Part shown: piece after piece, positions 4,837 through 60,600 of the stretch | Layout: each line of letters opens with the position of its first letter | Position numbering within the stretch: the stretch's first letter is position 1 | Virus record (IMG/VR): IMGVR_UViG_3300030339_000003 | Location: 124,001 to 188,000 of that record | Length of the DNA stretch: 64,000 nucleotides | Strand: one strand, 5' to 3' | The notes under the pieces: model-generated | Told to the model about the DNA's origin: nothing | What the model saw: only the letters and a program-made list of their open reading frames with translations | Database searches by the model: none | Position numbers and translations under genes: made by a program

Positions 4837-4856
4837 TAAGTAATATAGACTTGAAA
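4837..4856 (-). promoter_or_regulatory. early (virion RNAP) promoter, TATATTAC motif, for chmA
   Basis: Minus strand TTTCAAGTCTATATTACTTA; TATATTAC is the reported phiKZ early promoter core. Confidence 0.8.
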
Positions 4857-11214: not shown

Positions 11215-12198
11215 TTAGAAGCAGCTACCGTCTTCGTTAGCATCATCGCTGAAGTCGTCTTGCTTAACAAAAGTAGAACGAGAGTTCTGTGACGATTTTT
11301 CCAGTTCGTCCAGTTCATGTTTTACTTTTTCTACTGCTTCGCCGTGATCCAGGGTCAACACGATAGTACTGTCGGATGGTGGGTTGTTATCAAGGTTGAT
11401 AATACCCGTTGCACGATAACCTGCGCCTTCAAAAATGGTCTTCACGTTTTCACGGCTGTCATGCAGCGAGCAATACGCTACTGGCGGTTTGCCGGTAAAA
11501 TCGGCCAGATACTTTTCGTTGAAGAAATTGATTTCAGACAGCGCTGGCGGCAGGCCGGTAACTTTTGAGTATTGAAGCAAATTAACGATGTCTTCAAAGT
11601 CCAGACCTTCGTTTGATTCGGTCAGGAACAGAGAAAGGTAATTGATTTCGTTGACGGCTTCTTTGTTTACTTCGCCCCAGGTTTTATCAGACGTGTTGTT
11701 AACGCGAATGAACGGGATGACTTTGCCCAGGTAGCGTTGTTGAGTTTGGTTAGCGTAAGACTGCAACACTTTAACCGAGTTACGACGTTCTACCAGTGAG
11801 CTGAAATCAGATACCAGAACCAGAACAGCCGGAACACCTTTGCTGATCAGATAACGCATTGTTGCTAACGTCAGACCAGAACCAGAACCGCCCGCACCAG
11901 AACCAATGACAATAACAAATTTGCCAGGTTTATGTTTACGGAAAGTTTCGCCGATGAATGGAGACATATGCTCGTAGTTGAGCGTGATATCTTTACCACT
12001 ACCCTGCGCTTTTTCGCCAGGAGCGCGAGTTGAATTCATGTGTTCCAGTGGGAACATATTATCGGTCGGGTTGGAATCAGAAGTATCCAGTGCCAGATAA
12101 GATGCTTCTTTAATGATTTTAGTACCAGGCATAGCCAGCAGATCTTTACCAATGTTAATACCAGTACCGCCGCAAAGTACGATCTGTAATTCTGACAT
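11215..12198 (-). CDS. phuZ: PhuZ tubulin (phage spindle)
   Basis: GGTGINIG, GSGK and GSGAGGSGSG tubulin/FtsZ signature loops, GLDFED T7-loop-like segment, acidic C-tail, 327 aa. Confidence 0.93.
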   Translation of the reverse strand: MSELQIVLCGGTGINIGKDLLAMPGTKIIKEASYLALDTSDSNPTDNMFPLEHMNSTRAPGEKAQGSGKDITLNYEHMSPFIGETFRKHKPGKFVIVIGSGAGGSGSGLTLATMRYLISKGVPAVLVLVSDFSSLVERRNSVKVLQSYANQTQQRYLGKVIPFIRVNNTSDKTWGEVNKEAVNEINYLSLFLTESNEGLDFEDIVNLLQYSKVTGLPPALSEINFFNEKYLADFTGKPPVAYCSLHDSRENVKTIFEGAGYRATGIINLDNNPPSDSTIVLTLDHGEAVEKVKHELDELEKSSQNSRSTFVKQDDFSDDANEDGSCF

Positions 12199-12269
12199 GT
12201 TACTACTCCATTGTTGTTTAAAGGACTTACTTATACAATTAAGAAAAGATTATGAATACAACTAACACC

Positions 12270-12289
12270 TAAGTAATATAGGTCTGAAA
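12270..12289 (-). promoter_or_regulatory. early promoter (TATATTAC) for phuZ
   Basis: Minus strand TTTCAGACCTATATTACTTA. Confidence 0.8.
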
Positions 12290-12330
12290 TTATAACGCTT
12301 ACTTAAAAATACAAAAAAATAAATAGGTGT

Positions 12331-12358
12331 TAGTCTAACCGCCTCAGCGGTTAGACTA
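12331..12358 (-). terminator. terminator closing the RNA island
   Basis: TAGTCTAACCGC/GCGGTTAGACTA perfect stem, T-rich tract on minus strand. Confidence 0.75.
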
Positions 12359-12362
12359 TTAA

Positions 12363-13319
12363 ATCCCCAGAAGGTTCATTGTATTCGGAATCCTAGGATG
12401 GCGCAATGCCAATCAATATATTTCTTACGGCGTAGCGGCCGAGGATGCGCTGGTTTTAATACTTCCGAACTGGGGATGAGTTCATTGGAAGATTCGGTAT
12501 ATGTTAAACCTTTAATGGTAGCTACCACAAGATTAAACATCGTAAGTTGGGTTAGAAAGAATTTACCGGTTGAGGGTAAACGTAATATAAGAAACATTGT
12601 TACCCTCCATTTGGAATATCATTTAGAGTGAAGCATTGTGTACAAGTCAAGAGCATATCACATCGGAGGCTGCCCGATGTACGCTTCATTGGCTTACTGT
12701 TATAGCCCGTTAATCTTCCATAACGCGACGCGTCGCAACAAGAAGTTCTTTAACCGGCATGTGTGGCTCTTATTGGTACCGGATATACCGGCGGTGGTGT
12801 CCACGAGCTACCAACGTGTCTCGTCGGTGTGCTTACACAATACCCACTCTAAATGATACTAAAGCAGGTCAACTATCCTTGTTGACCTTTACTTTTATTA
12901 CAGGCTGTTTACGACAAGGCAAAAGAACGCTCACGCTGACAGGGATGAGGTTCGGTAAGTATTTGATTTACTTAACGAACATCACTTTACATAAAGGTTG
13001 ATATTGCAGTGAGAAATTATTAGTGTCTGCTAGGGGCATAGGGGTGAAAGTCCCGTTCCCATTTTCTATTCTTGTTGTTCCCACACAGACCGATGGGCAA
13101 GCAGTTTTCACTTCGGGAGAAGCAAACTTTTATCGTTGCAACGCGATAAATCTTTAATAAGGTGTAAGGTATTCAATAACTTTATCGAGTTTGGTTGTCA
13201 ATAGACGTTTCAATTAAAAACTGAGTTTCAGTTACTGGTACCTTACATAAAGAGTATTTGCAAAACAGATCGACGGTTAACAATGCGAGGTGACACCCTT
13301 AATGATCTGTTTCACAAAT
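12363..13319. ncRNA. putative large structured non-coding RNA or RNA cluster (unassigned)
   Basis: No convincing CDS; nested long-range helices, e.g. 12617-12630/12845-12858 (14 bp perfect), 12635-42/12834-41, 12363-70/12470-77, 13163-71/13239-47, 13263-71/13304-12. Confidence 0.6.
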
Positions 13320-13320
13320 T

Positions 13321-13430
13321 TGGTAGGAAGTGAAGGATTCGAACCTCCGCGCTGTCCAGTATAGCCGTGGCCATACCTTCAAGCGACAACACTTATTATG
13401 TTGGGGCTTCGGCCTCTCGCCCAACTTCCT
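13321..13430 (-). tRNA. atypical 110-nt tRNA-like RNA with very long variable arm (anticodon position ATA)
   Basis: Acceptor AGGAAGT/ACTTCCT-A-CCA, D arm GGC/GCC, CAACA-TAATAAG-TGTTG, 38-nt variable region, T arm GGAGG-TTCGAAT-CCTTC. Confidence 0.75.
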
Positions 13431-13434
13431 ATAA

Positions 13435-13521
13435 TAGTGACCAAGGTTGGAGTCGAACCAACGTACACACTTTGGTGTAACTCTATTTAAGAGTAAGATG
13501 AGCCGTTCTCTTTTCTTGATC
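13435..13521 (-). tRNA. degenerate tRNA-like RNA / pseudo-tRNA
   Basis: Acceptor GATCAAG/CTTGGTC, T arm GTTGG-TTCGACT-CCAAC, variable-arm hairpin TACAC/GTGTA, aberrant anticodon arm, ends A-CTA. Confidence 0.6.
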
Positions 13522-13531
13522 TGAATTAGTA

Positions 13532-13921
13532 TTATGACTCGACAAGTGAACTAATAAACAAAAGTTGTTTACCAATTAACTTCACTTCTGACCAGCCTTT
13601 TTCAATAGCAAGTTTAATAACCAAATTAATAAGTTCTGGTTTAATGGCTTCTTTGTTGCAGTCCATTAAAGGGGTTACATTTCCCAACTTATCATACACT
13701 GGCCAGTCTGGTTTATAATAAGACTTAATAAGTTTTAAAACACCATCGCTACTCATTAAATAAGTAGGATCGTTTTTAGTTCTTTCCCCAGCATCCGGCA
13801 AACTAACTATTTTTTGTTTAAAATAGTTAAATGGAGTGGGATCACCTGGACCCGCTAAATGTTCATTAACGCGTGGAGGTTCGGCTGGATAAGGCTGATT
13901 TAATATTAACTCGTCTTTCAT
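13532..13921 (-). CDS. hypothetical protein embedded in the tRNA/ncRNA island
   Basis: 129-aa ORF with GAGG RBS. Confidence 0.7.
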   Translation of the reverse strand: MKDELILNQPYPAEPPRVNEHLAGPGDPTPFNYFKQKIVSLPDAGERTKNDPTYLMSSDGVLKLIKSYYKPDWPVYDKLGNVTPLMDCNKEAIKPELINLVIKLAIEKGWSEVKLIGKQLLFISSLVES

Positions 13922-13992
13922 TTTTTACTTCCTCATGGATTGTGCATCAAAAACCAAAATGGTAGATGCGGATCTTCATGACTTTATGAAGT

Positions 13993-14077
13993 TGGTACGA
14001 GGGATGGGAATCGAACCCACATGATCGAAATCGAGGGATTTTAAATCCCTTGCGTCTACCTATTTCGCCACCCTCGC
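13993..14077 (-). tRNA. tRNA-Leu(UAA)
   Basis: Full cloverleaf GCGAGGG...AGGGA-TT TAA AA-TCCCT, type II variable arm, TTCGATT loop, A discriminator, encoded CCA. Confidence 0.96.
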
Positions 14078-14084
14078 GTTTATT

Positions 14085-14345
14085 AGACACCGGCTCGCTC
14101 TGTGATGAACTCACGTCACTTAAAATACTCCCTGCCGGAATGGGGAATCGCGTTGGTCACAGATATAGTCGCGTACTAAACCGTTCTCAACGTTCTTGTA
14201 TAAGGTGACGCCCCTACGAATCCCACGTAGCTTATAAGCGCCCATAAGTCAAAATCAACACTTCGCACAATGGCCTGGTTGGTTCCTACTCATTTAGGGC
14301 TTACGGTCGTCTTCTGGTTCCCAATGGAACACTGCGACAGGCATC
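14085..14345. ncRNA. putative structured RNA between tRNA-Leu and tRNA-Asn
   Basis: ORF-free, GC-richer than flanks, several stems (14099-105/14157-63, 14273-77/14338-42, 14317-21/14326-30). Confidence 0.4.
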
Positions 14346-14351
14346 ATAATT

Positions 14352-14427
14352 TGGCGACCCTAGCAGGACTCGAACCTGCGACATATGGATTAACAGTCCA
14401 CCGTTCTACCAACTGAACTATAAGGTC
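14352..14427 (-). tRNA. tRNA-Asn(GUU)
   Basis: 76-nt cloverleaf GACCTTA...GTGGA-CT GTT AA-TCCAT...TTCGAGT...G-CCA. Confidence 0.96.
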
Positions 14428-14434
14428 TTAATTC

Positions 14435-14797
14435 TTATTTCGGTTCTGTCTTACTATCCAGCTCTGGACGCTTTTGAGCTAAAACATAATATGCAAATGT
14501 GGATTTAACCCATCCGCCTTCACCGATTTCACGAACGTAGTAATCCAAGGTCGGATCTTCTGCTTCCGCTTTGTTTAATTCTGCAACCAGCTGATCATAA
14601 CCACCGATATGTTTATCATCGATATAGATCTGCGGGACTGTCGTTACTGGTTTGCCGGCAAGTAAAGATAATTCTTCTTTACCCATCTTAGCTTGAACGA
14701 TGTCAATATAATCGAATTCCATTGACAACTCTAGCATCAGAGCTTTGGCTTTGTCACAGTAAGGACAATTGGGTTTACCATAAATCACAACTTTCAT
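14435..14797 (-). CDS. glutaredoxin with C-terminal extension
   Basis: CPYC active site, TVPQIYIDDKHIGGY motif; start reassigned to MKVVIY. Confidence 0.92.
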   Translation of the reverse strand: MKVVIYGKPNCPYCDKAKALMLELSMEFDYIDIVQAKMGKEELSLLAGKPVTTVPQIYIDDKHIGGYDQLVAELNKAEAEDPTLDYYVREIGEGGWVKSTFAYYVLAQKRPELDSKTEPK

Positions 14798-14861
14798 GTT
14801 AAACTCTTTTTGTTGGTTACCACGGAGAAACATAATATATTTAACCATGGTAATAAATTAT

Positions 14862-18640: not shown

Positions 18641-18660
18641 TAGGTAATATAGGTCTGAAA
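18641..18660 (-). promoter_or_regulatory. early promoter (TATATTAC)
   Basis: Minus strand TTTCAGACCTATATTACCTA. Confidence 0.8.
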
Positions 18661-44326: not shown

Positions 44327-44346
44327 TAAGTAATATAGATTTAAAA
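44327..44346 (-). promoter_or_regulatory. early promoter (TATATTAC)
   Basis: Minus strand TTTAAATCTATATTACTTA. Confidence 0.75.
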
Positions 44347-46035: not shown

Positions 46036-46055
46036 TAAGTAATATAGGTTTGAAA
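46036..46055 (-). promoter_or_regulatory. early promoter (TATATTAC)
   Basis: Minus strand TTTCAAACCTATATTACTTA. Confidence 0.8.
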
Positions 46056-47467: not shown

Positions 47468-47487
47468 TAAGTAATATAGACTTATAA
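47468..47487 (-). promoter_or_regulatory. early promoter (TATATTAC)
   Basis: Minus strand TTATAAGTCTATATTACTTA. Confidence 0.75.
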
Positions 47488-57692: not shown

Positions 57693-60600
57693 ATGAGTGA
57701 CAATTGGAATGACGATCCTTTTAATGGCGATATCGATTTTGATTCTGATTTTGATTCCGACAAGAAAGGATCGAAGTTAAAATCATTCGCTATAGGATTT
57801 CTAGGAGGTGCAAAAGACGCCCTCGTAGGATCAACCGACGCCAAGATTAAAACAGTTAAAATGGCCCTTCCGGCATCGTTCCACGGGACATTTGAATTCA
57901 TTAACGATACACGTCGTTTAGTCAGTCAAGTCACTGACGAATTCAAAAAGAACACCGCTGGTTCAATGCAAGATATCCAGCAGATTATGGAAGGCCGCAA
58001 AGGACGCATTAATGATTCGACTGGTGGTGTCATTTCTAGCCAGTTGGATAAGTTCAGCCAATACGACTTTAGTACTTGGAATACAGGAGGGACAACCACT
58101 TCTGAATCCACAGGTCAGCAAGACACGACTGATGAAGAAGTTAATGAGCTAATTGGTGTAACAAAACAAACATCATTACTTACACTCGGCGGATTAAAAC
58201 AATTAGGCGGTGATCTCACTAACGCCATTGTATCAGCTGGCGCAGCACAATCATCTGCATTAACCGGTATTAACGTTGGATTAGTCAAGTCTAACGCTTA
58301 TTTGAAAAACTTAGTCGACTATCAAATTAAAGTTCAAGCTAAGAACGATGCGATGAAAATTAATTTGTTAGCTCGCATGCATTTAACTAATGCTAAGTTC
58401 TACAAATTCGTTGAAGCTTCCAACCACATGATGATGAAAGAATTCAGAGACATCGCTAAGTTTAGCAAAATGCCTGACTTCCAGAAAATGTCAATGACTG
58501 ATGAAGTCAAGAAACGTATTCGTGGTACGTTCTTTGACACCGTCCGTGGCGGCATGGGTGGTATCGGTGGACTGGTTAATGACCGTGTAGGTAAATACGC
58601 ACGTGACAACGGTTATAACGCGTTAAGTAACATAACCTCATCTCTTGCTATGGCTAAGGATATGACCGGCGGTATGTCGTCTCAGGACCTCATGCAGATG
58701 TTCGGTGGCATGGTAGGTGGTGGCGCTATTGATATGCTTCCACGTATGATGAACGGACCTATGGCTGCTAAGTTGAAACAACGCTTTAGTAAAGCCAATC
58801 CGGCCATGGCCAGACGCATGGGTAAGAACTGGGGCAAATTGACAACTCGTGGCAATCAGCTCAGCTATGGTTTACAAAACATGGAAGGGATGTTTAATAC
58901 GCTGTCACAAAACTACCAGGGCGGTCACTTCTTTGATGAGGACGAAGGAACTTACGAGGACTATGTTGCAGCTTTACCTCCAGACCAAACACCAATGTCT
59001 AAACGCAAATGGTCTATGTCTAAGTGGGGCAAATCTGCGGCTAATAAAGGGTTAGGTGCTATTTTAGATCAAACTTACGGTTCTGGTAAAACCAAATACG
59101 AACTCAAGAAACGTACACTGTCTGATAACCCGGAACAACACATCTGGACTCGTCAGTCCGATCGTACGTTAAATGAAATCATTCCTGCATTGATTACCCA
59201 AACAAACTTGTCTTTAGAGATGATGCGTACGGGTAATAACAATTTAAAACCAATGCGTTATGATTGGACTAAAGGCCAGTTTATTAACCCTAATCAGGCT
59301 AAGGCTTTAGTTACTCGCGACATCTATGGTGAGAACGCTTTAGGCTCTGCAGTTTATAGTGCGAAGTCTGCGGCAGGCACCATCGATAAAGAAAACCAAT
59401 TATCTAAAAGTGCGAAAGATACTTTAGCGTTACAACTTGCTAAGAACTCGCATGCTAAATTAGATTTCTCTCCTTACCATTTATTGAACTTAGAAAAAGA
59501 CGGTATTGATCCAAAGATCGCTAAAGAAATCCGTGAGATGACTTTAAAGAACTTTGGTATTACGACCGATAATCTTAATCAGTTCACAAATGGCACTGAC
59601 CGTGACCGTGCTAAGTTATTAGCCTTCATGCCAGGCAAAGGTGCCGCATTAGCAAACGAAGCGTTACCGATGGTTAAGGACATCCGTCGTGGACTTTCTG
59701 ATTCTAGCGCGATGATCGACCAATACCGTAATTCTGGTCATTATGACACATTACGCGAAGCAGGTATTATTACTACTGATAAAAATGGTCGTGAAGAAAT
59801 CGATGAACAGAAAATGTGGGATATGTTCAAGCTTCAACAGAACGATCCTAACTTTAATAAAAAGCTTACACAGCAGTACGCCAAGAAAGGTCGTAAACCA
59901 GGTGCGACTGTTAACCGTCCAGGAGTATTAGGCGGAGACGCTGGTGAAGCCCCAGACTTTGGTGAATTGACCGAAACAGTAAGTCAACTGAATACCAACA
60001 TCAAAGGGTTAGGCGCAGGCGGTTTAGGCGGTTCTGCTAACAGTGACACCGGAGCTTATTTTAATAAGTTATCTGGGCAAATGGACACACTGATTGGGAT
60101 CCAAACTAGCCACACTGAAATTTTCCAAAAGCTTTTAGAAAAACAACCAACTATTATCCGCTCTAAACGTGCGAAAGCCGAAGAAGAGCAAGGTAAGAAA
60201 ACACTGATGGATCGTATTAAAAGTATTTCACCACGAAATATCTTTAATAAAGGTGTTGAGACGTTGTTAAACAATGAACCACTTATTTTGGGTGGGTTAA
60301 TTGGTGGTCTGGGTGCGTACGCTTTACATGACCCTAAGACTGCCGCATTGTTAGGCGCCGGTGCATTAGCCATGGGTGCTTATTCTAAAGTCCGTTCACT
60401 AAACGCAGCTCGCTTTGCAGAACAAGAAGATCTGTATGAGAACCCGGGTGACGAAGAACCATTGTTACGGGGTGAGCGTTTAAAACGCGGGGATTACTTT
60501 GACAGCGCTACACGTAAAGTATTAAAGACTTGGAGTGACGTAACTGGCGCCATCATTGATCGTACCGGCAATATCGTTGCTTCTGTTAAACAGTTAGGTG

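What the first reader, a model, noticed from the sequence alone, without database searches (positions are those of the whole stretch)
12331..14427. A ~2.1-kb RNA island beside phuZ: canonical tRNAs, aberrant tRNA mimics and large structured ncRNA(s)
Seen: in an otherwise tightly gene-packed genome, ~1 kb (12363-13319) plus ~260 bp (14085-14345) lack credible CDSs yet are full of nested helices, and sit with two normal tRNAs and two tRNA-like RNAs. Known: phage tRNA clusters can carry stable RNAs of unknown function (T4 RNAs C/D) and giant ornate RNAs such as GOLLD/ROOL occur beside phage tRNAs. Inference: an uncharacterised multi-RNA system of a nucleus-forming phage (decoys for anticodon nucleases, RNA scaffolds, or translation modulators), processed at tRNA-like ends.
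Basis: partly seen in the sequence, partly recalled or inferred. Interest (0 to 1): 0.85.

Follow-up and report, generated by a model that had tools for sequence, protein, structure and literature searches.

The report
Modular structured RNA island beside phuZ
Between a glutaredoxin gene and phuZ, this uncultivated nucleus-forming jumbo phage carries two normal tRNAs, two defective tRNA look-alikes and three conserved folded RNA modules of unknown function that match no catalogued RNA family, mixed with two real small protein genes.

Summary
tRNA-Asn (14352-14427) and tRNA-Leu(UAA) (13993-14077) are canonical. Two cloverleaf-like elements (13437-13521, 13321-13430) fall below tRNA thresholds; the second derives from the clade's tRNA-Ser.

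About 520 nt (12607-13128, minus strand) hold three structured RNA modules (A, B1, B2). They are conserved in 6-9 related uncultivated chimallivirus lineages. Compensatory base changes support them: 90-95% of cells paired against 33-52% in slid controls. Covariance models also recovered members outside their seeds. Rfam gives no match to GOLLD, ROOL, introns or riboswitches.

ORF 12376-12597 (73 aa) is a conserved real gene. The 274-nt tRNA-Asn/tRNA-Leu spacer folds no better than shuffles (z +0.41).

Modules behave as cassettes. Relatives delete, replace or separate them exactly at module borders, sometimes with an ORF or a tRNA between A and B1. So this is not one giant RNA.

No expression data could be obtained, and function is unknown. 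My best guess is that stable RNAs are processed from a tRNA-containing precursor. The main rival is a cis-acting leader for the small ORF.

The parts
14352..14427 (-). tRNA-Asn(GUU), canonical
   Evidence: ARAGORN. Rfam RF00005, 73.8 bits.
14078..14351 (-). 274-nt spacer between the two tRNAs. No credible CDS and no structural signal. It behaves as a discrete cassette.
   Evidence: Fold z +0.41. Only 61 nt (14246-14304) are conserved, 79% with L004. In run X1 it lies in a contig whose flanks differ on both sides.
13993..14077 (-). tRNA-Leu(UAA), canonical class II
   Evidence: ARAGORN. Rfam 57.1 bits. The same tRNA is present in L014 and L015, and is disrupted in L004.
13532..13921 (-). ORF129, a real protein gene of unknown function, present or absent as a cassette
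   Evidence: Homologues of 45-88% identity. In L135 and L136 they also sit just downstream of a tRNA-Asn cluster. The X1 relative skips 13528-13991. No Pfam hit.
13437..13521 (-). tRNA-like A: cloverleaf with a canonical T-arm, A instead of U at position 8, a long variable arm and no CCA
   Evidence: Fold z -2.45. ARAGORN calls it only at the ps85 threshold, as 'tRNA-Phe(aaa)'. No Rfam tRNA hit at E<=10.
13321..13430 (-). tRNA-like B: a tRNA-Ser-derived cloverleaf with a non-canonical anticodon loop (UAAUAAG, A at position 33), a 37-nt variable arm and an encoded ACCA end
   Evidence: Fold z -2.90. Acceptor, D-arm and T-arm align to the clade's tRNA-Ser(GCU). ARAGORN calls it only in relaxed/intron mode. 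This unit alone (13321-13434) is absent in the X1 relative.
13129..13320 (-). Lineage-specific structured spacer with three hairpins
   Evidence: z -5.48, 0 of 200 shuffles. Retained in the X1 relative. No homologue found in more distant relatives.
13014..13128 (-). RNA module A: invariant CUUC-UCCC-GAAG hairpin, a two-tier hairpin P2, a two-tier hairpin P3 and the GACACUA linker
   Evidence: 77-82% nucleotide identity to relatives whose PhuZ is only 60% identical. 95% of cells paired against 35-52% slid; 9 pairs changed on both sides; 0 of 500 shuffles. Model R2 scores 124 bits here and finds non-seed L015 (63.7 bits) and L014 (29.6 bits). Its own MFE z is only -0.10.
12853..12994 (-). RNA module B1: a long hairpin with the conserved apical stem UAAGUA/UACUUA and 3' CCGAACC, a variable middle, and a hairpin with a conserved A-N-GGAU loop
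   Evidence: z -4.80. 90% of cells paired against 33-44% slid; 9 pairs changed on both sides; 0 of 500 shuffles. Model R1 gives 97 bits, a single site in the 64-kb window, and finds non-seed L014 at 31.8 bits.
12616..12859 (-). RNA module B2: a roughly 27-bp imperfect closing helix capped by a multi-hairpin junction; motif UAUGGAAG
   Evidence: MFE structure. In 7 relatives the homologous long helix has compensatory changes at most positions: 26 of 57 predicted pairs, plus conserved G-U pairs. Homology of the window copy rests on position, architecture and short motifs only.
12376..12597 (-). Conserved small CDS (73 aa; MF..(Y/R)LP..G(K/E)(F/Y)...W(Q/H)xAI(W/L)GFR), with Shine-Dalgarno GGAGGG at 12603-12608
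   Evidence: Open and in frame in 8 lineages. Indels are multiples of 3. Codon position 2 changes least, and position 3 most in nearly all pairs. No Pfam or PHROG hit.
12311..12358 (-). Terminator-like element closing the island: a perfect 12-bp stem with a tetraloop (12331-12358), then a U-rich tract
   Evidence: Read from the sequence and present in the MFE fold. The simple scanner did not call it, because the U-run starts 9 nt after the stem.
12265..12285 (-). Promoter-like motif cTATATTACttaggtg, 75 nt upstream of phuZ. It marks the start of the next transcription unit.
   Evidence: The motif is enriched in the window: 11 sites against 3.4 expected, 0 of 100 shuffles. The extended consensus is shared by 6 minus-strand sites. 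This block is conserved in relatives.

Best explanation
The Grx-phuZ gap is a cassette-built RNA gene cluster on the gene (minus) strand. It holds:
- two functional tRNAs;
- two degenerate tRNA derivatives;
- three independently foldable, conserved structured RNA modules (A, B1, B2), which together form a new RNA family restricted to one clade of uncultivated chimalliviruses;
- two real small protein genes.

Proposed working (inferred, not shown):
1. The cluster is read through from an upstream promoter as one precursor. That precursor ends at the strong hairpin at 12331-12358.
2. The tRNAs and tRNA-like elements recruit RNase P/Z. The long B2 helix may be an RNase III-type site. The modules are thereby released as discrete stable RNAs.
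3. The released RNAs act in trans as protein-binding or decoy RNAs during infection, like the stable RNAs of the T4 tRNA cluster or GOLLD/ROOL.
For: Structure under selection:
- Compensatory changes in module A, B1 and the B2 helix.
- Paired fraction 90-95% against 33-52% when partners are slid.
- Models built without L014 and L015 still find them, with the helices kept by different sequences.

RNA strand:
- Conserved G-U pairs exist only in gene-strand orientation.
- z is -4.43 on the minus strand against -1.87 on the plus strand.

Non-coding:
- 1-nt indels between close relatives shift every frame in module A.
- Module A is the best-conserved DNA in the 2.8 kb compared.

Separate modules rather than one RNA:
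- A and B1 are split by an ORF cassette in L007, L008 and L016, and by an ORF plus tRNA-Leu in L015.
- A is absent from L004 and replaced in the X1 relative.
- B2 is reduced to a plain hairpin in L004.

Link to tRNA processing:
- B1 starts 10-25 nt after the CCA end of tRNA-Leu in L004 and L015.

Transcription unit:
- There is no promoter-like TATATTAC motif with the extended consensus inside the island. One lies just after its terminal hairpin.
- L010, L016 and L015 have a GC-stem plus U7 terminator right after B2.
Against: - No transcript evidence. The runs holding the sequence have flat, DNA-like depth. The only cDNA-labelled run (X2) gave two short contigs inside B2 (12688-12822), and the tool flags that run as probably DNA.
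- Only about 6-9 lineages are available, with effective sequence numbers of 1.55-3.2. The covariation statistics are therefore not phylogenetically corrected.
- Module A alone is not thermodynamically special, z -0.10.
- Homology of the window's B2 to that of relatives is positional and architectural only.
- Processing enzymes, RNA stability and trans action are all inferred.
- The constant position of B1/B2 directly upstream of the small ORF fits a cis role equally well.
Confidence: 0.5

Rival explanations
1. Cis-acting leader or attenuator. B1 and B2 (and A, for the cassette ORF where present) are structured untranslated regions. They would control transcription read-through, processing or translation of the conserved small ORF, and possibly downstream phuZ. 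They would not be free-standing RNAs.
For: - B1/B2 always lie directly upstream of the small ORF in every lineage, including L004, where B2 is only a hairpin plus U-tract.
- In L010, L016 and L015 a strong terminator sits 10-15 nt before the ORF's Shine-Dalgarno sequence, the classic aptamer-terminator-SD layout.
- In three lineages module A lies immediately upstream of a homologous 88-92-aa ORF.
Against: - No Rfam riboswitch, T-box or leader match at E<=10.
- The window copy has no terminator between B2 and the ORF.
- Module A stays highly conserved in five lineages (window, L005, L009, L012, L010) that lack the cassette ORF, where it abuts B1.
- 520 nt is far longer than known attenuators.
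Confidence: 0.3
2. One large ornate RNA of the GOLLD/ROOL type, a single roughly 0.5-0.7-kb transcript that may form multimers. The ORF and tRNA insertions would be tolerated in a flexible linker.
For: - Size, phage origin and position next to tRNAs match what is described for GOLLD and ROOL (PMC5737381, read).
- A, B1 and B2 are contiguous in the window and in four other lineages.
- The whole-stretch z is -4.43.
Against: - No hit to any Rfam model, including GOLLD and ROOL.
- No covarying long-range pair joining the modules was found.
- The insertions carry their own terminator hairpins.
- Modules are lost or replaced one at a time.
Confidence: 0.1
3. DNA-level or neutral features. The inverted repeats would be recombination or insertion hot-spot sequences, MITE-like ends or decaying pseudogenes, with no RNA function.
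For: - Module borders coincide with recombination breakpoints, and mobile ORFs (an HNH gene, the 88-92-aa ORF) invade the region.
- B2 is bounded by a long inverted repeat.
Against: - Helices are kept by compensatory changes with conserved G-U pairs, which would be A-C mismatches on the other strand.
- Folding is asymmetric between strands.
- There is a single copy per genome window.
- Conservation exceeds that of neighbouring coding DNA.
Confidence: 0.07

Closest known systems
GOLLD (RF01998) and ROOL (RF03087) large ornate RNAs
   Same: Large structured RNAs of unknown function, used by phages and prophages and often next to tRNAs, possibly co-transcribed with them (PMC5737381). The combined length here, about 520-620 nt, is similar.
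   Different: No sequence or structure match in Rfam. Here the RNA is three separable modules, not one fold. It is restricted to one chimallivirus clade. No evidence for multimers.
Stable RNAs C and D (species 1 and 2) of the phage T4 tRNA cluster (from my own knowledge)
   Same: Non-tRNA stable RNAs encoded inside a phage tRNA cluster, matured by tRNA-processing enzymes, function still unknown. This is the closest analogy for how the modules would be made.
   Different: The T4 RNAs are about 120-140 nt and tRNA-like at their 3' ends. No model was available to test homology. A, B1 and B2 are not tRNA-like.
Phage tRNA clusters with pseudo-tRNAs
   Same: tRNA-Asn and tRNA-Leu, plus degenerate derivatives gained or lost as whole units. 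tRNA-like B aligns to the clade's tRNA-Ser(GCU).
   Different: B keeps a perfect acceptor stem, T-arm and encoded CCA, but has an anticodon loop that cannot decode normally and an over-long variable arm.
Transcription-attenuating leader RNAs (riboswitch or T-box layout)
   Same: Structured RNA, then a terminator, then a Shine-Dalgarno sequence and an ORF, in L010, L016 and L015.
   Different: No Rfam match, much larger, no terminator in the window copy, and a phage-encoded RNA polymerase context.

Membership tests
tRNA (Rfam RF00005 / ARAGORN) | Cloverleaf scoring above the gathering score (29 bits) or called at ARAGORN default settings | tested here: met
   tRNA-Asn 73.8 bits and tRNA-Leu 57.1 bits. 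This applies to those two genes only.
tRNA (applied to tRNA-like A and B) | Score above threshold; 7-nt anticodon loop with U33; U8 | tested here: not met
   No RF00005 hit at E<=10, and none at ARAGORN default. A is called only at the ps85 threshold and B only with a forced 10-nt intron. A has A at position 8. B has A at position 33 (sequence).
GOLLD / ROOL | Match to the family covariance model | tested here: not met
   cmscan of the window at gathering score and of 12000-14700 at E<=10 found no hit. Relatives also gave none.
GOLLD / ROOL | Phage or prophage location next to tRNA genes; length above 500 nt | tested here: met
   A chimallivirus contig with PhuZ, chimallin and tRNAs in the same gap. 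A+B1+B2 is 522 nt in the window. However, the modules are separable.
GOLLD / ROOL | Homo-oligomeric RNA-only assembly | not testable with these tools
   Needs biochemistry or cryo-EM (10.1101/2024.12.08.627333, listed).
Group I / group II intron | Ribozyme core model match, with flanking exons of an interrupted gene | tested here: not met
   No Rfam intron hit in the window or in relatives. The insertion in L004's tRNA-Leu replaces 15 nt of the tRNA and carries its own promoter-like motif, so it is a disruption, not an intron.
tmRNA | tRNA-like ends plus a tag reading frame | tested here: not met
   ARAGORN found no tmRNA in the window.
Riboswitch / T-box / attenuator leader | Known aptamer model; terminator or sequestering helix between the RNA and the regulated ORF | tested here: inconclusive
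   No Rfam model matches. A terminator precedes the small ORF in L010, L016 and L015 but not in the window.
T4 tRNA-cluster stable RNAs C/D | Sequence or structure homology; maturation by RNase P and CCA addition | not tested
   No model or sequence was available from the tools. The resemblance is contextual only.

The most novel reading that the evidence does not exclude
A, B1 and B2 (perhaps together with the tRNA-Ser-derived mimic) are a new class of abundant structured RNAs specific to nucleus-forming phages. They would work as an RNP or RNA-only assembly in host take-over, for example by titrating a host RNA-binding defence or translation factor in the cytoplasm while the genome is shielded in the phage nucleus.
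Probability: 0.2. Interest if true: 0.85.

Novelty: new variant of a known kind. Interest (0 to 1): 0.6.

Why it matters
Large conserved bacterial and phage RNAs without a known function are rare, and they have repeatedly led to new biochemistry. Here three covariation-supported modules match no Rfam family. They sit in a clade of chimalliviruses, where RNA biology (mRNA export, translation take-over, defence evasion) is an open field. The review read (PMC13282480) says only that phiKZ expresses non-coding RNAs.

The cassette-like gain, loss and replacement of modules gives natural 'knock-outs' for comparative work. The tRNA-Ser-derived mimic gives a testable case of a tRNA gene converted to another use.

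The limits are real. No cultured host or phage is known, no expression data exist, and the clade is small.

Tried and rejected
- Rfam at gathering score and at E<=10 on the window and on relatives gave only tRNAs.
- BLASTN of the island against 50,697 phage records matched only the tRNAs. There is no close cultured relative.
- Erwinia phage RisingSun, Shewanella phages FishSpeaker and SXP01, and Aeromonas phage pAEv1810 have no match to models R1 or R2.
- The motif scan CTTCTCCCGAAGYGA was too unspecific: 105 mostly chance loci.
- The metagenome scan also returned three chance hits in unrelated coding DNA: L125, L128 and L130.
- Group I intron in L004's tRNA-Leu: rejected.
- Reading module A as a protein: rejected, because close relatives differ by 1-nt indels.
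- A promoter inside the island: the TATATTAC at 12582-12589 lacks the extended consensus and lies in codons 3-5 of the small ORF.
- Expression from public runs: the four runs behave as DNA.
- A covariance model for B2 was not built, because about 300 positions exceeds the calibration limit. MAFFT could not align the window's B2 interior to relatives.
- PHROG and Pfam gave nothing for the small ORF, ORF129 (only short sub-threshold PHROG pieces) or the 88-92-aa cassette ORF.
Full report
**Source and layout**

The window is part of IMG/VR contig IMGVR_UViG_3300030339_000003, 231 kb. It encodes PhuZ (PHROG 4733, E 2.5e-67). Syntenic relatives also carry chimallin and the divergent DNA polymerase, so this is an uncultivated chimallivirus.

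The nearest cultured phages share only 39-40% PhuZ identity and no island DNA except tRNAs. Genes run on the minus strand. Read 5' to 3' on that strand, the Grx-phuZ gap holds:
- a glutaredoxin-like ORF (14435-14848; Pfam Glutaredoxin 2.4e-16)
- tRNA-Asn
- a 274-nt spacer
- tRNA-Leu(UAA)
- ORF129
- tRNA-like A
- tRNA-like B
- a 192-nt structured spacer
- RNA modules A, B1 and B2
- a 73-aa ORF
- a strong terminal hairpin
- a promoter-like motif, followed by phuZ

**Checking the observation**

The two tRNAs are canonical.

The two 'mimics' fold as cloverleaves, with z -2.45 and -2.90. They fail Rfam's tRNA model even at E<=10 and fail ARAGORN's default settings. Relaxed ARAGORN calls A 'tRNA-Phe(aaa)', and calls B 'tRNA-Ser' only by inventing a 10-nt intron.

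tRNA-like B aligns in its acceptor stem, D-arm and T-arm to the tRNA-Ser(GCU) that relatives carry next to tRNA-Asn. Its anticodon loop is UAAUAAG, with A at position 33. Its variable arm is 37 nt, and its discriminator is A rather than G. It is therefore a converted or decaying tRNA-Ser copy.

The stretch 12607-13128 is strongly structured on the gene strand (z -4.43) and much less so on the other strand (z -1.87). The stretch 13129-13321 has z -5.48.

- The 274-nt spacer between the tRNAs folds no better than shuffles (z +0.41).
- The '1 kb without credible CDS' contains a real small gene at 12376-12597. It has a GGAGGG Shine-Dalgarno sequence. It stays open in eight diverged relatives, with indels only in multiples of three. 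Codon position 2 changes least, and position 3 changes most in nearly all pairs. The termini are conserved: MF..(Y/R)LP..G(K/E)(F/Y) and W(Q/H)xAI(W/L)GFR.

ORF129 is also real. It has homologues of 45-88% identity. In two other jumbo-phage contigs these again follow a tRNA-Asn cluster, near Tad2-like and glutaredoxin genes.

**Relatives and conservation**

PhuZ homologues of 54-71% identity led to 13 syntenic loci. A motif scan of IMG/VR and of the JGI metagenomes added more copies, all from the same clade. Three chance hits were discarded.

BLASTN of the island against these loci aligned the non-coding block 12949-13125 at 77-82% identity, in genomes whose PhuZ protein is only 60% identical. 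It also aligned the small-ORF region and the phuZ promoter block.

Close relatives differ by single-base indels inside block A. These shift every reading frame, so the conservation is not protein-coding.

**Structure and covariation**

- *Module A (13014-13128).* It has an invariant CUUC-UCCC-GAAG hairpin and two two-tier hairpins. On alignment A2, 95.1% of cells are paired, against 35-52% when partners are slid. Nine pairs changed on both sides, and 0 of 500 shuffles reach this.
- *Module B1 (12853-12994).* It has a long hairpin with a conserved apical stem and a conserved CCGAACC strand, plus a second hairpin whose loop keeps A-N-GGAU while its stem changes completely between lineages. On A3, 90.2% of cells are paired against 33-44% slid. 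Nine pairs changed on both sides, 0 of 500 shuffles.
- *Module B2.* In seven relatives, RNAalifold finds a 27-bp closing helix in which almost every pair shows compensatory change and none is broken. 26 of 57 predicted pairs have double changes. The window has the same architecture at the same place. Its interior could not be aligned, so its homology is positional.

Conserved G-U pairs in all three modules place the RNA on the gene strand.

Covariance models gave an independent check. R1 (B1) and R2 (A) each hit the window once, at 97 and 124 bits. They also recovered copies that were not in their seeds:
- L014, B1: 31.8 bits
- L015, A: 63.7 bits
- L014, A: 29.6 bits

In these copies the helices are formed by different sequences. 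Neither model hit RisingSun, FishSpeaker, SXP01 or pAEv1810. R1 also gave no hit in the control viral loci. R2 gave only weak hits (at most 22.6 bits) in control loci, which had been picked because they contain a 15-mer of module A.

Caveat: only about 6-9 lineages exist, with effective sequence numbers of 1.55-3.2. No phylogeny-aware test was run.

**Modularity**

The pieces behave as cassettes:
- A homologous 88-92-aa ORF, with its own Shine-Dalgarno sequence and (in L007, L008 and L016) a terminator hairpin, lies between A and B1 in L007, L008, L016 and L015. In L015 it is accompanied by tRNA-Leu.
- L004 lacks A. There B1 follows tRNA-Leu directly, and B2 is reduced to a plain AU-rich hairpin.
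- In run X1, a 95-99% identical relative replaces A with 95 other bases. It lacks exactly tRNA-like B (13321-13434) and exactly the ORF129 cassette (13528-13991).
- The X3 and X4 relatives diverge precisely at 13022, the A/B1 border.

This argues against one giant RNA and for several units.

**Transcription context**

A motif, cTATATTACttaggtg, is enriched in the window: 11 sites against 3.4 expected. It precedes phuZ at 12273-12280 and several other genes. From memory, it resembles the phiKZ early-promoter motif.

No site with the extended consensus lies inside the island. The island ends in a perfect 12-bp hairpin followed by a U-rich tract. So it is probably read from upstream as one precursor.

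In L010, L016 and L015 a GC-rich hairpin with U7 follows B2 immediately, just before the small ORF's Shine-Dalgarno sequence.

**Expression**

None could be shown. The four public runs holding the sequence have flat depth across genes and look like DNA.

The one run labelled as cDNA gave two short contigs (12688-12822, inside B2) and nothing on the neighbouring genes. The tool marks that run as probably DNA. This is a hint at most.

**Interpretation**

What is shown:
- a clade-specific set of three structured RNA modules under selection for base-pairing on the gene strand
- their position inside a tRNA cluster that also holds two defective tRNA derivatives and two real small genes

What is inferred:
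- co-transcription
- release of the modules by tRNA-processing enzymes and possibly RNase III
- action in trans

The strongest rival is a cis-acting leader for the small ORF. Its constant adjacency and the terminator layout in three lineages support that reading. A's conservation where no ORF follows it, and the lack of a terminator in the window, speak against it.

Membership in GOLLD, ROOL, introns, tmRNA or known leaders was tested and not met. The resemblance to GOLLD/ROOL (PMC5737381) and to the T4 stable RNAs is one of context and probable biogenesis only.

I found no description of such an RNA in papers on jumbo phages.

**Verdict**

This is a real and apparently undescribed structured-RNA locus. 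One 'RNA' segment is really a protein gene, and another shows no structural signal. Function is unknown and expression is unverified.

Noticed in passing
L004:1799-2744 (relative with 71% PhuZ identity): tRNA-Leu(UAA) is destroyed by an ~870-nt cassette (ARAGORN's forced-intron call: 849 nt) that encodes a 243-aa HNH_3-like endonuclease with its own TATATTAC promoter-like motif. Fifteen nucleotides of the tRNA (positions 21-35) are replaced, so this is a gene disruption, not an intron. There is no Rfam group I hit.
   Followed up: yes
window 4840-4847, 12273-12280, 18644-18651, 44330-44337, 46039-46046, 47471-47478 (minus strand): An extended motif, cTATATTACttaggtg, recurs upstream of genes. 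It is enriched: 11 sites against 3.4 expected. It is probably this phage's early-type promoter.
   Followed up: partly
window 57902-60055: A second stretch of about 2.1 kb without any ORF of 70 aa or more. Its short ORFs have no PHROG hit, there is no Rfam hit at gathering score, and no notable repeats.
   Followed up: partly
L007:5779-6057, L016:4266-4532, L015:5693-5962: A homologous 88-92-aa ORF family (C-terminal SAYL(I/L)N..GKTIQ.I) sits between RNA modules A and B1 in some lineages and is absent in others. No Pfam hit.
   Followed up: partly
L135:2712-3390 and L136:2755-3375: ORF129 homologues in other jumbo-phage contigs again lie directly after a tRNA-Asn cluster, near a Tad2-like (anti-Thoeris family) gene and a glutaredoxin gene.
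   Followed up: partly
L005:5791-5992 (also L009 and L012): These relatives carry a further structured segment of about 200 nt between the glutaredoxin gene and module A. It has no counterpart in the window, where the unrelated structured spacer 13129-13320 occupies that place.
   Followed up: no
L002:4070-4292 (Aeromonas phage pAEv1810) and L001:4754-4839 (Shewanella phage SXP01): Cultured jumbo phages also have long unannotated gaps in their tRNA clusters. The pAEv1810 spacer between tRNA-Asn and tRNA-Leu is strongly structured (z -3.97) and ends in a tRNA-like fold. SXP01 has a just-sub-threshold tRNA (28.3 bits).
   Followed up: no
window 12688-12822: In a wastewater library labelled RNA-Seq/cDNA (run X2), the only non-tRNA contigs on the 5-kb stretch fall inside module B2, at 90-95% identity. 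The tool flags the run as probably DNA.
   Followed up: no
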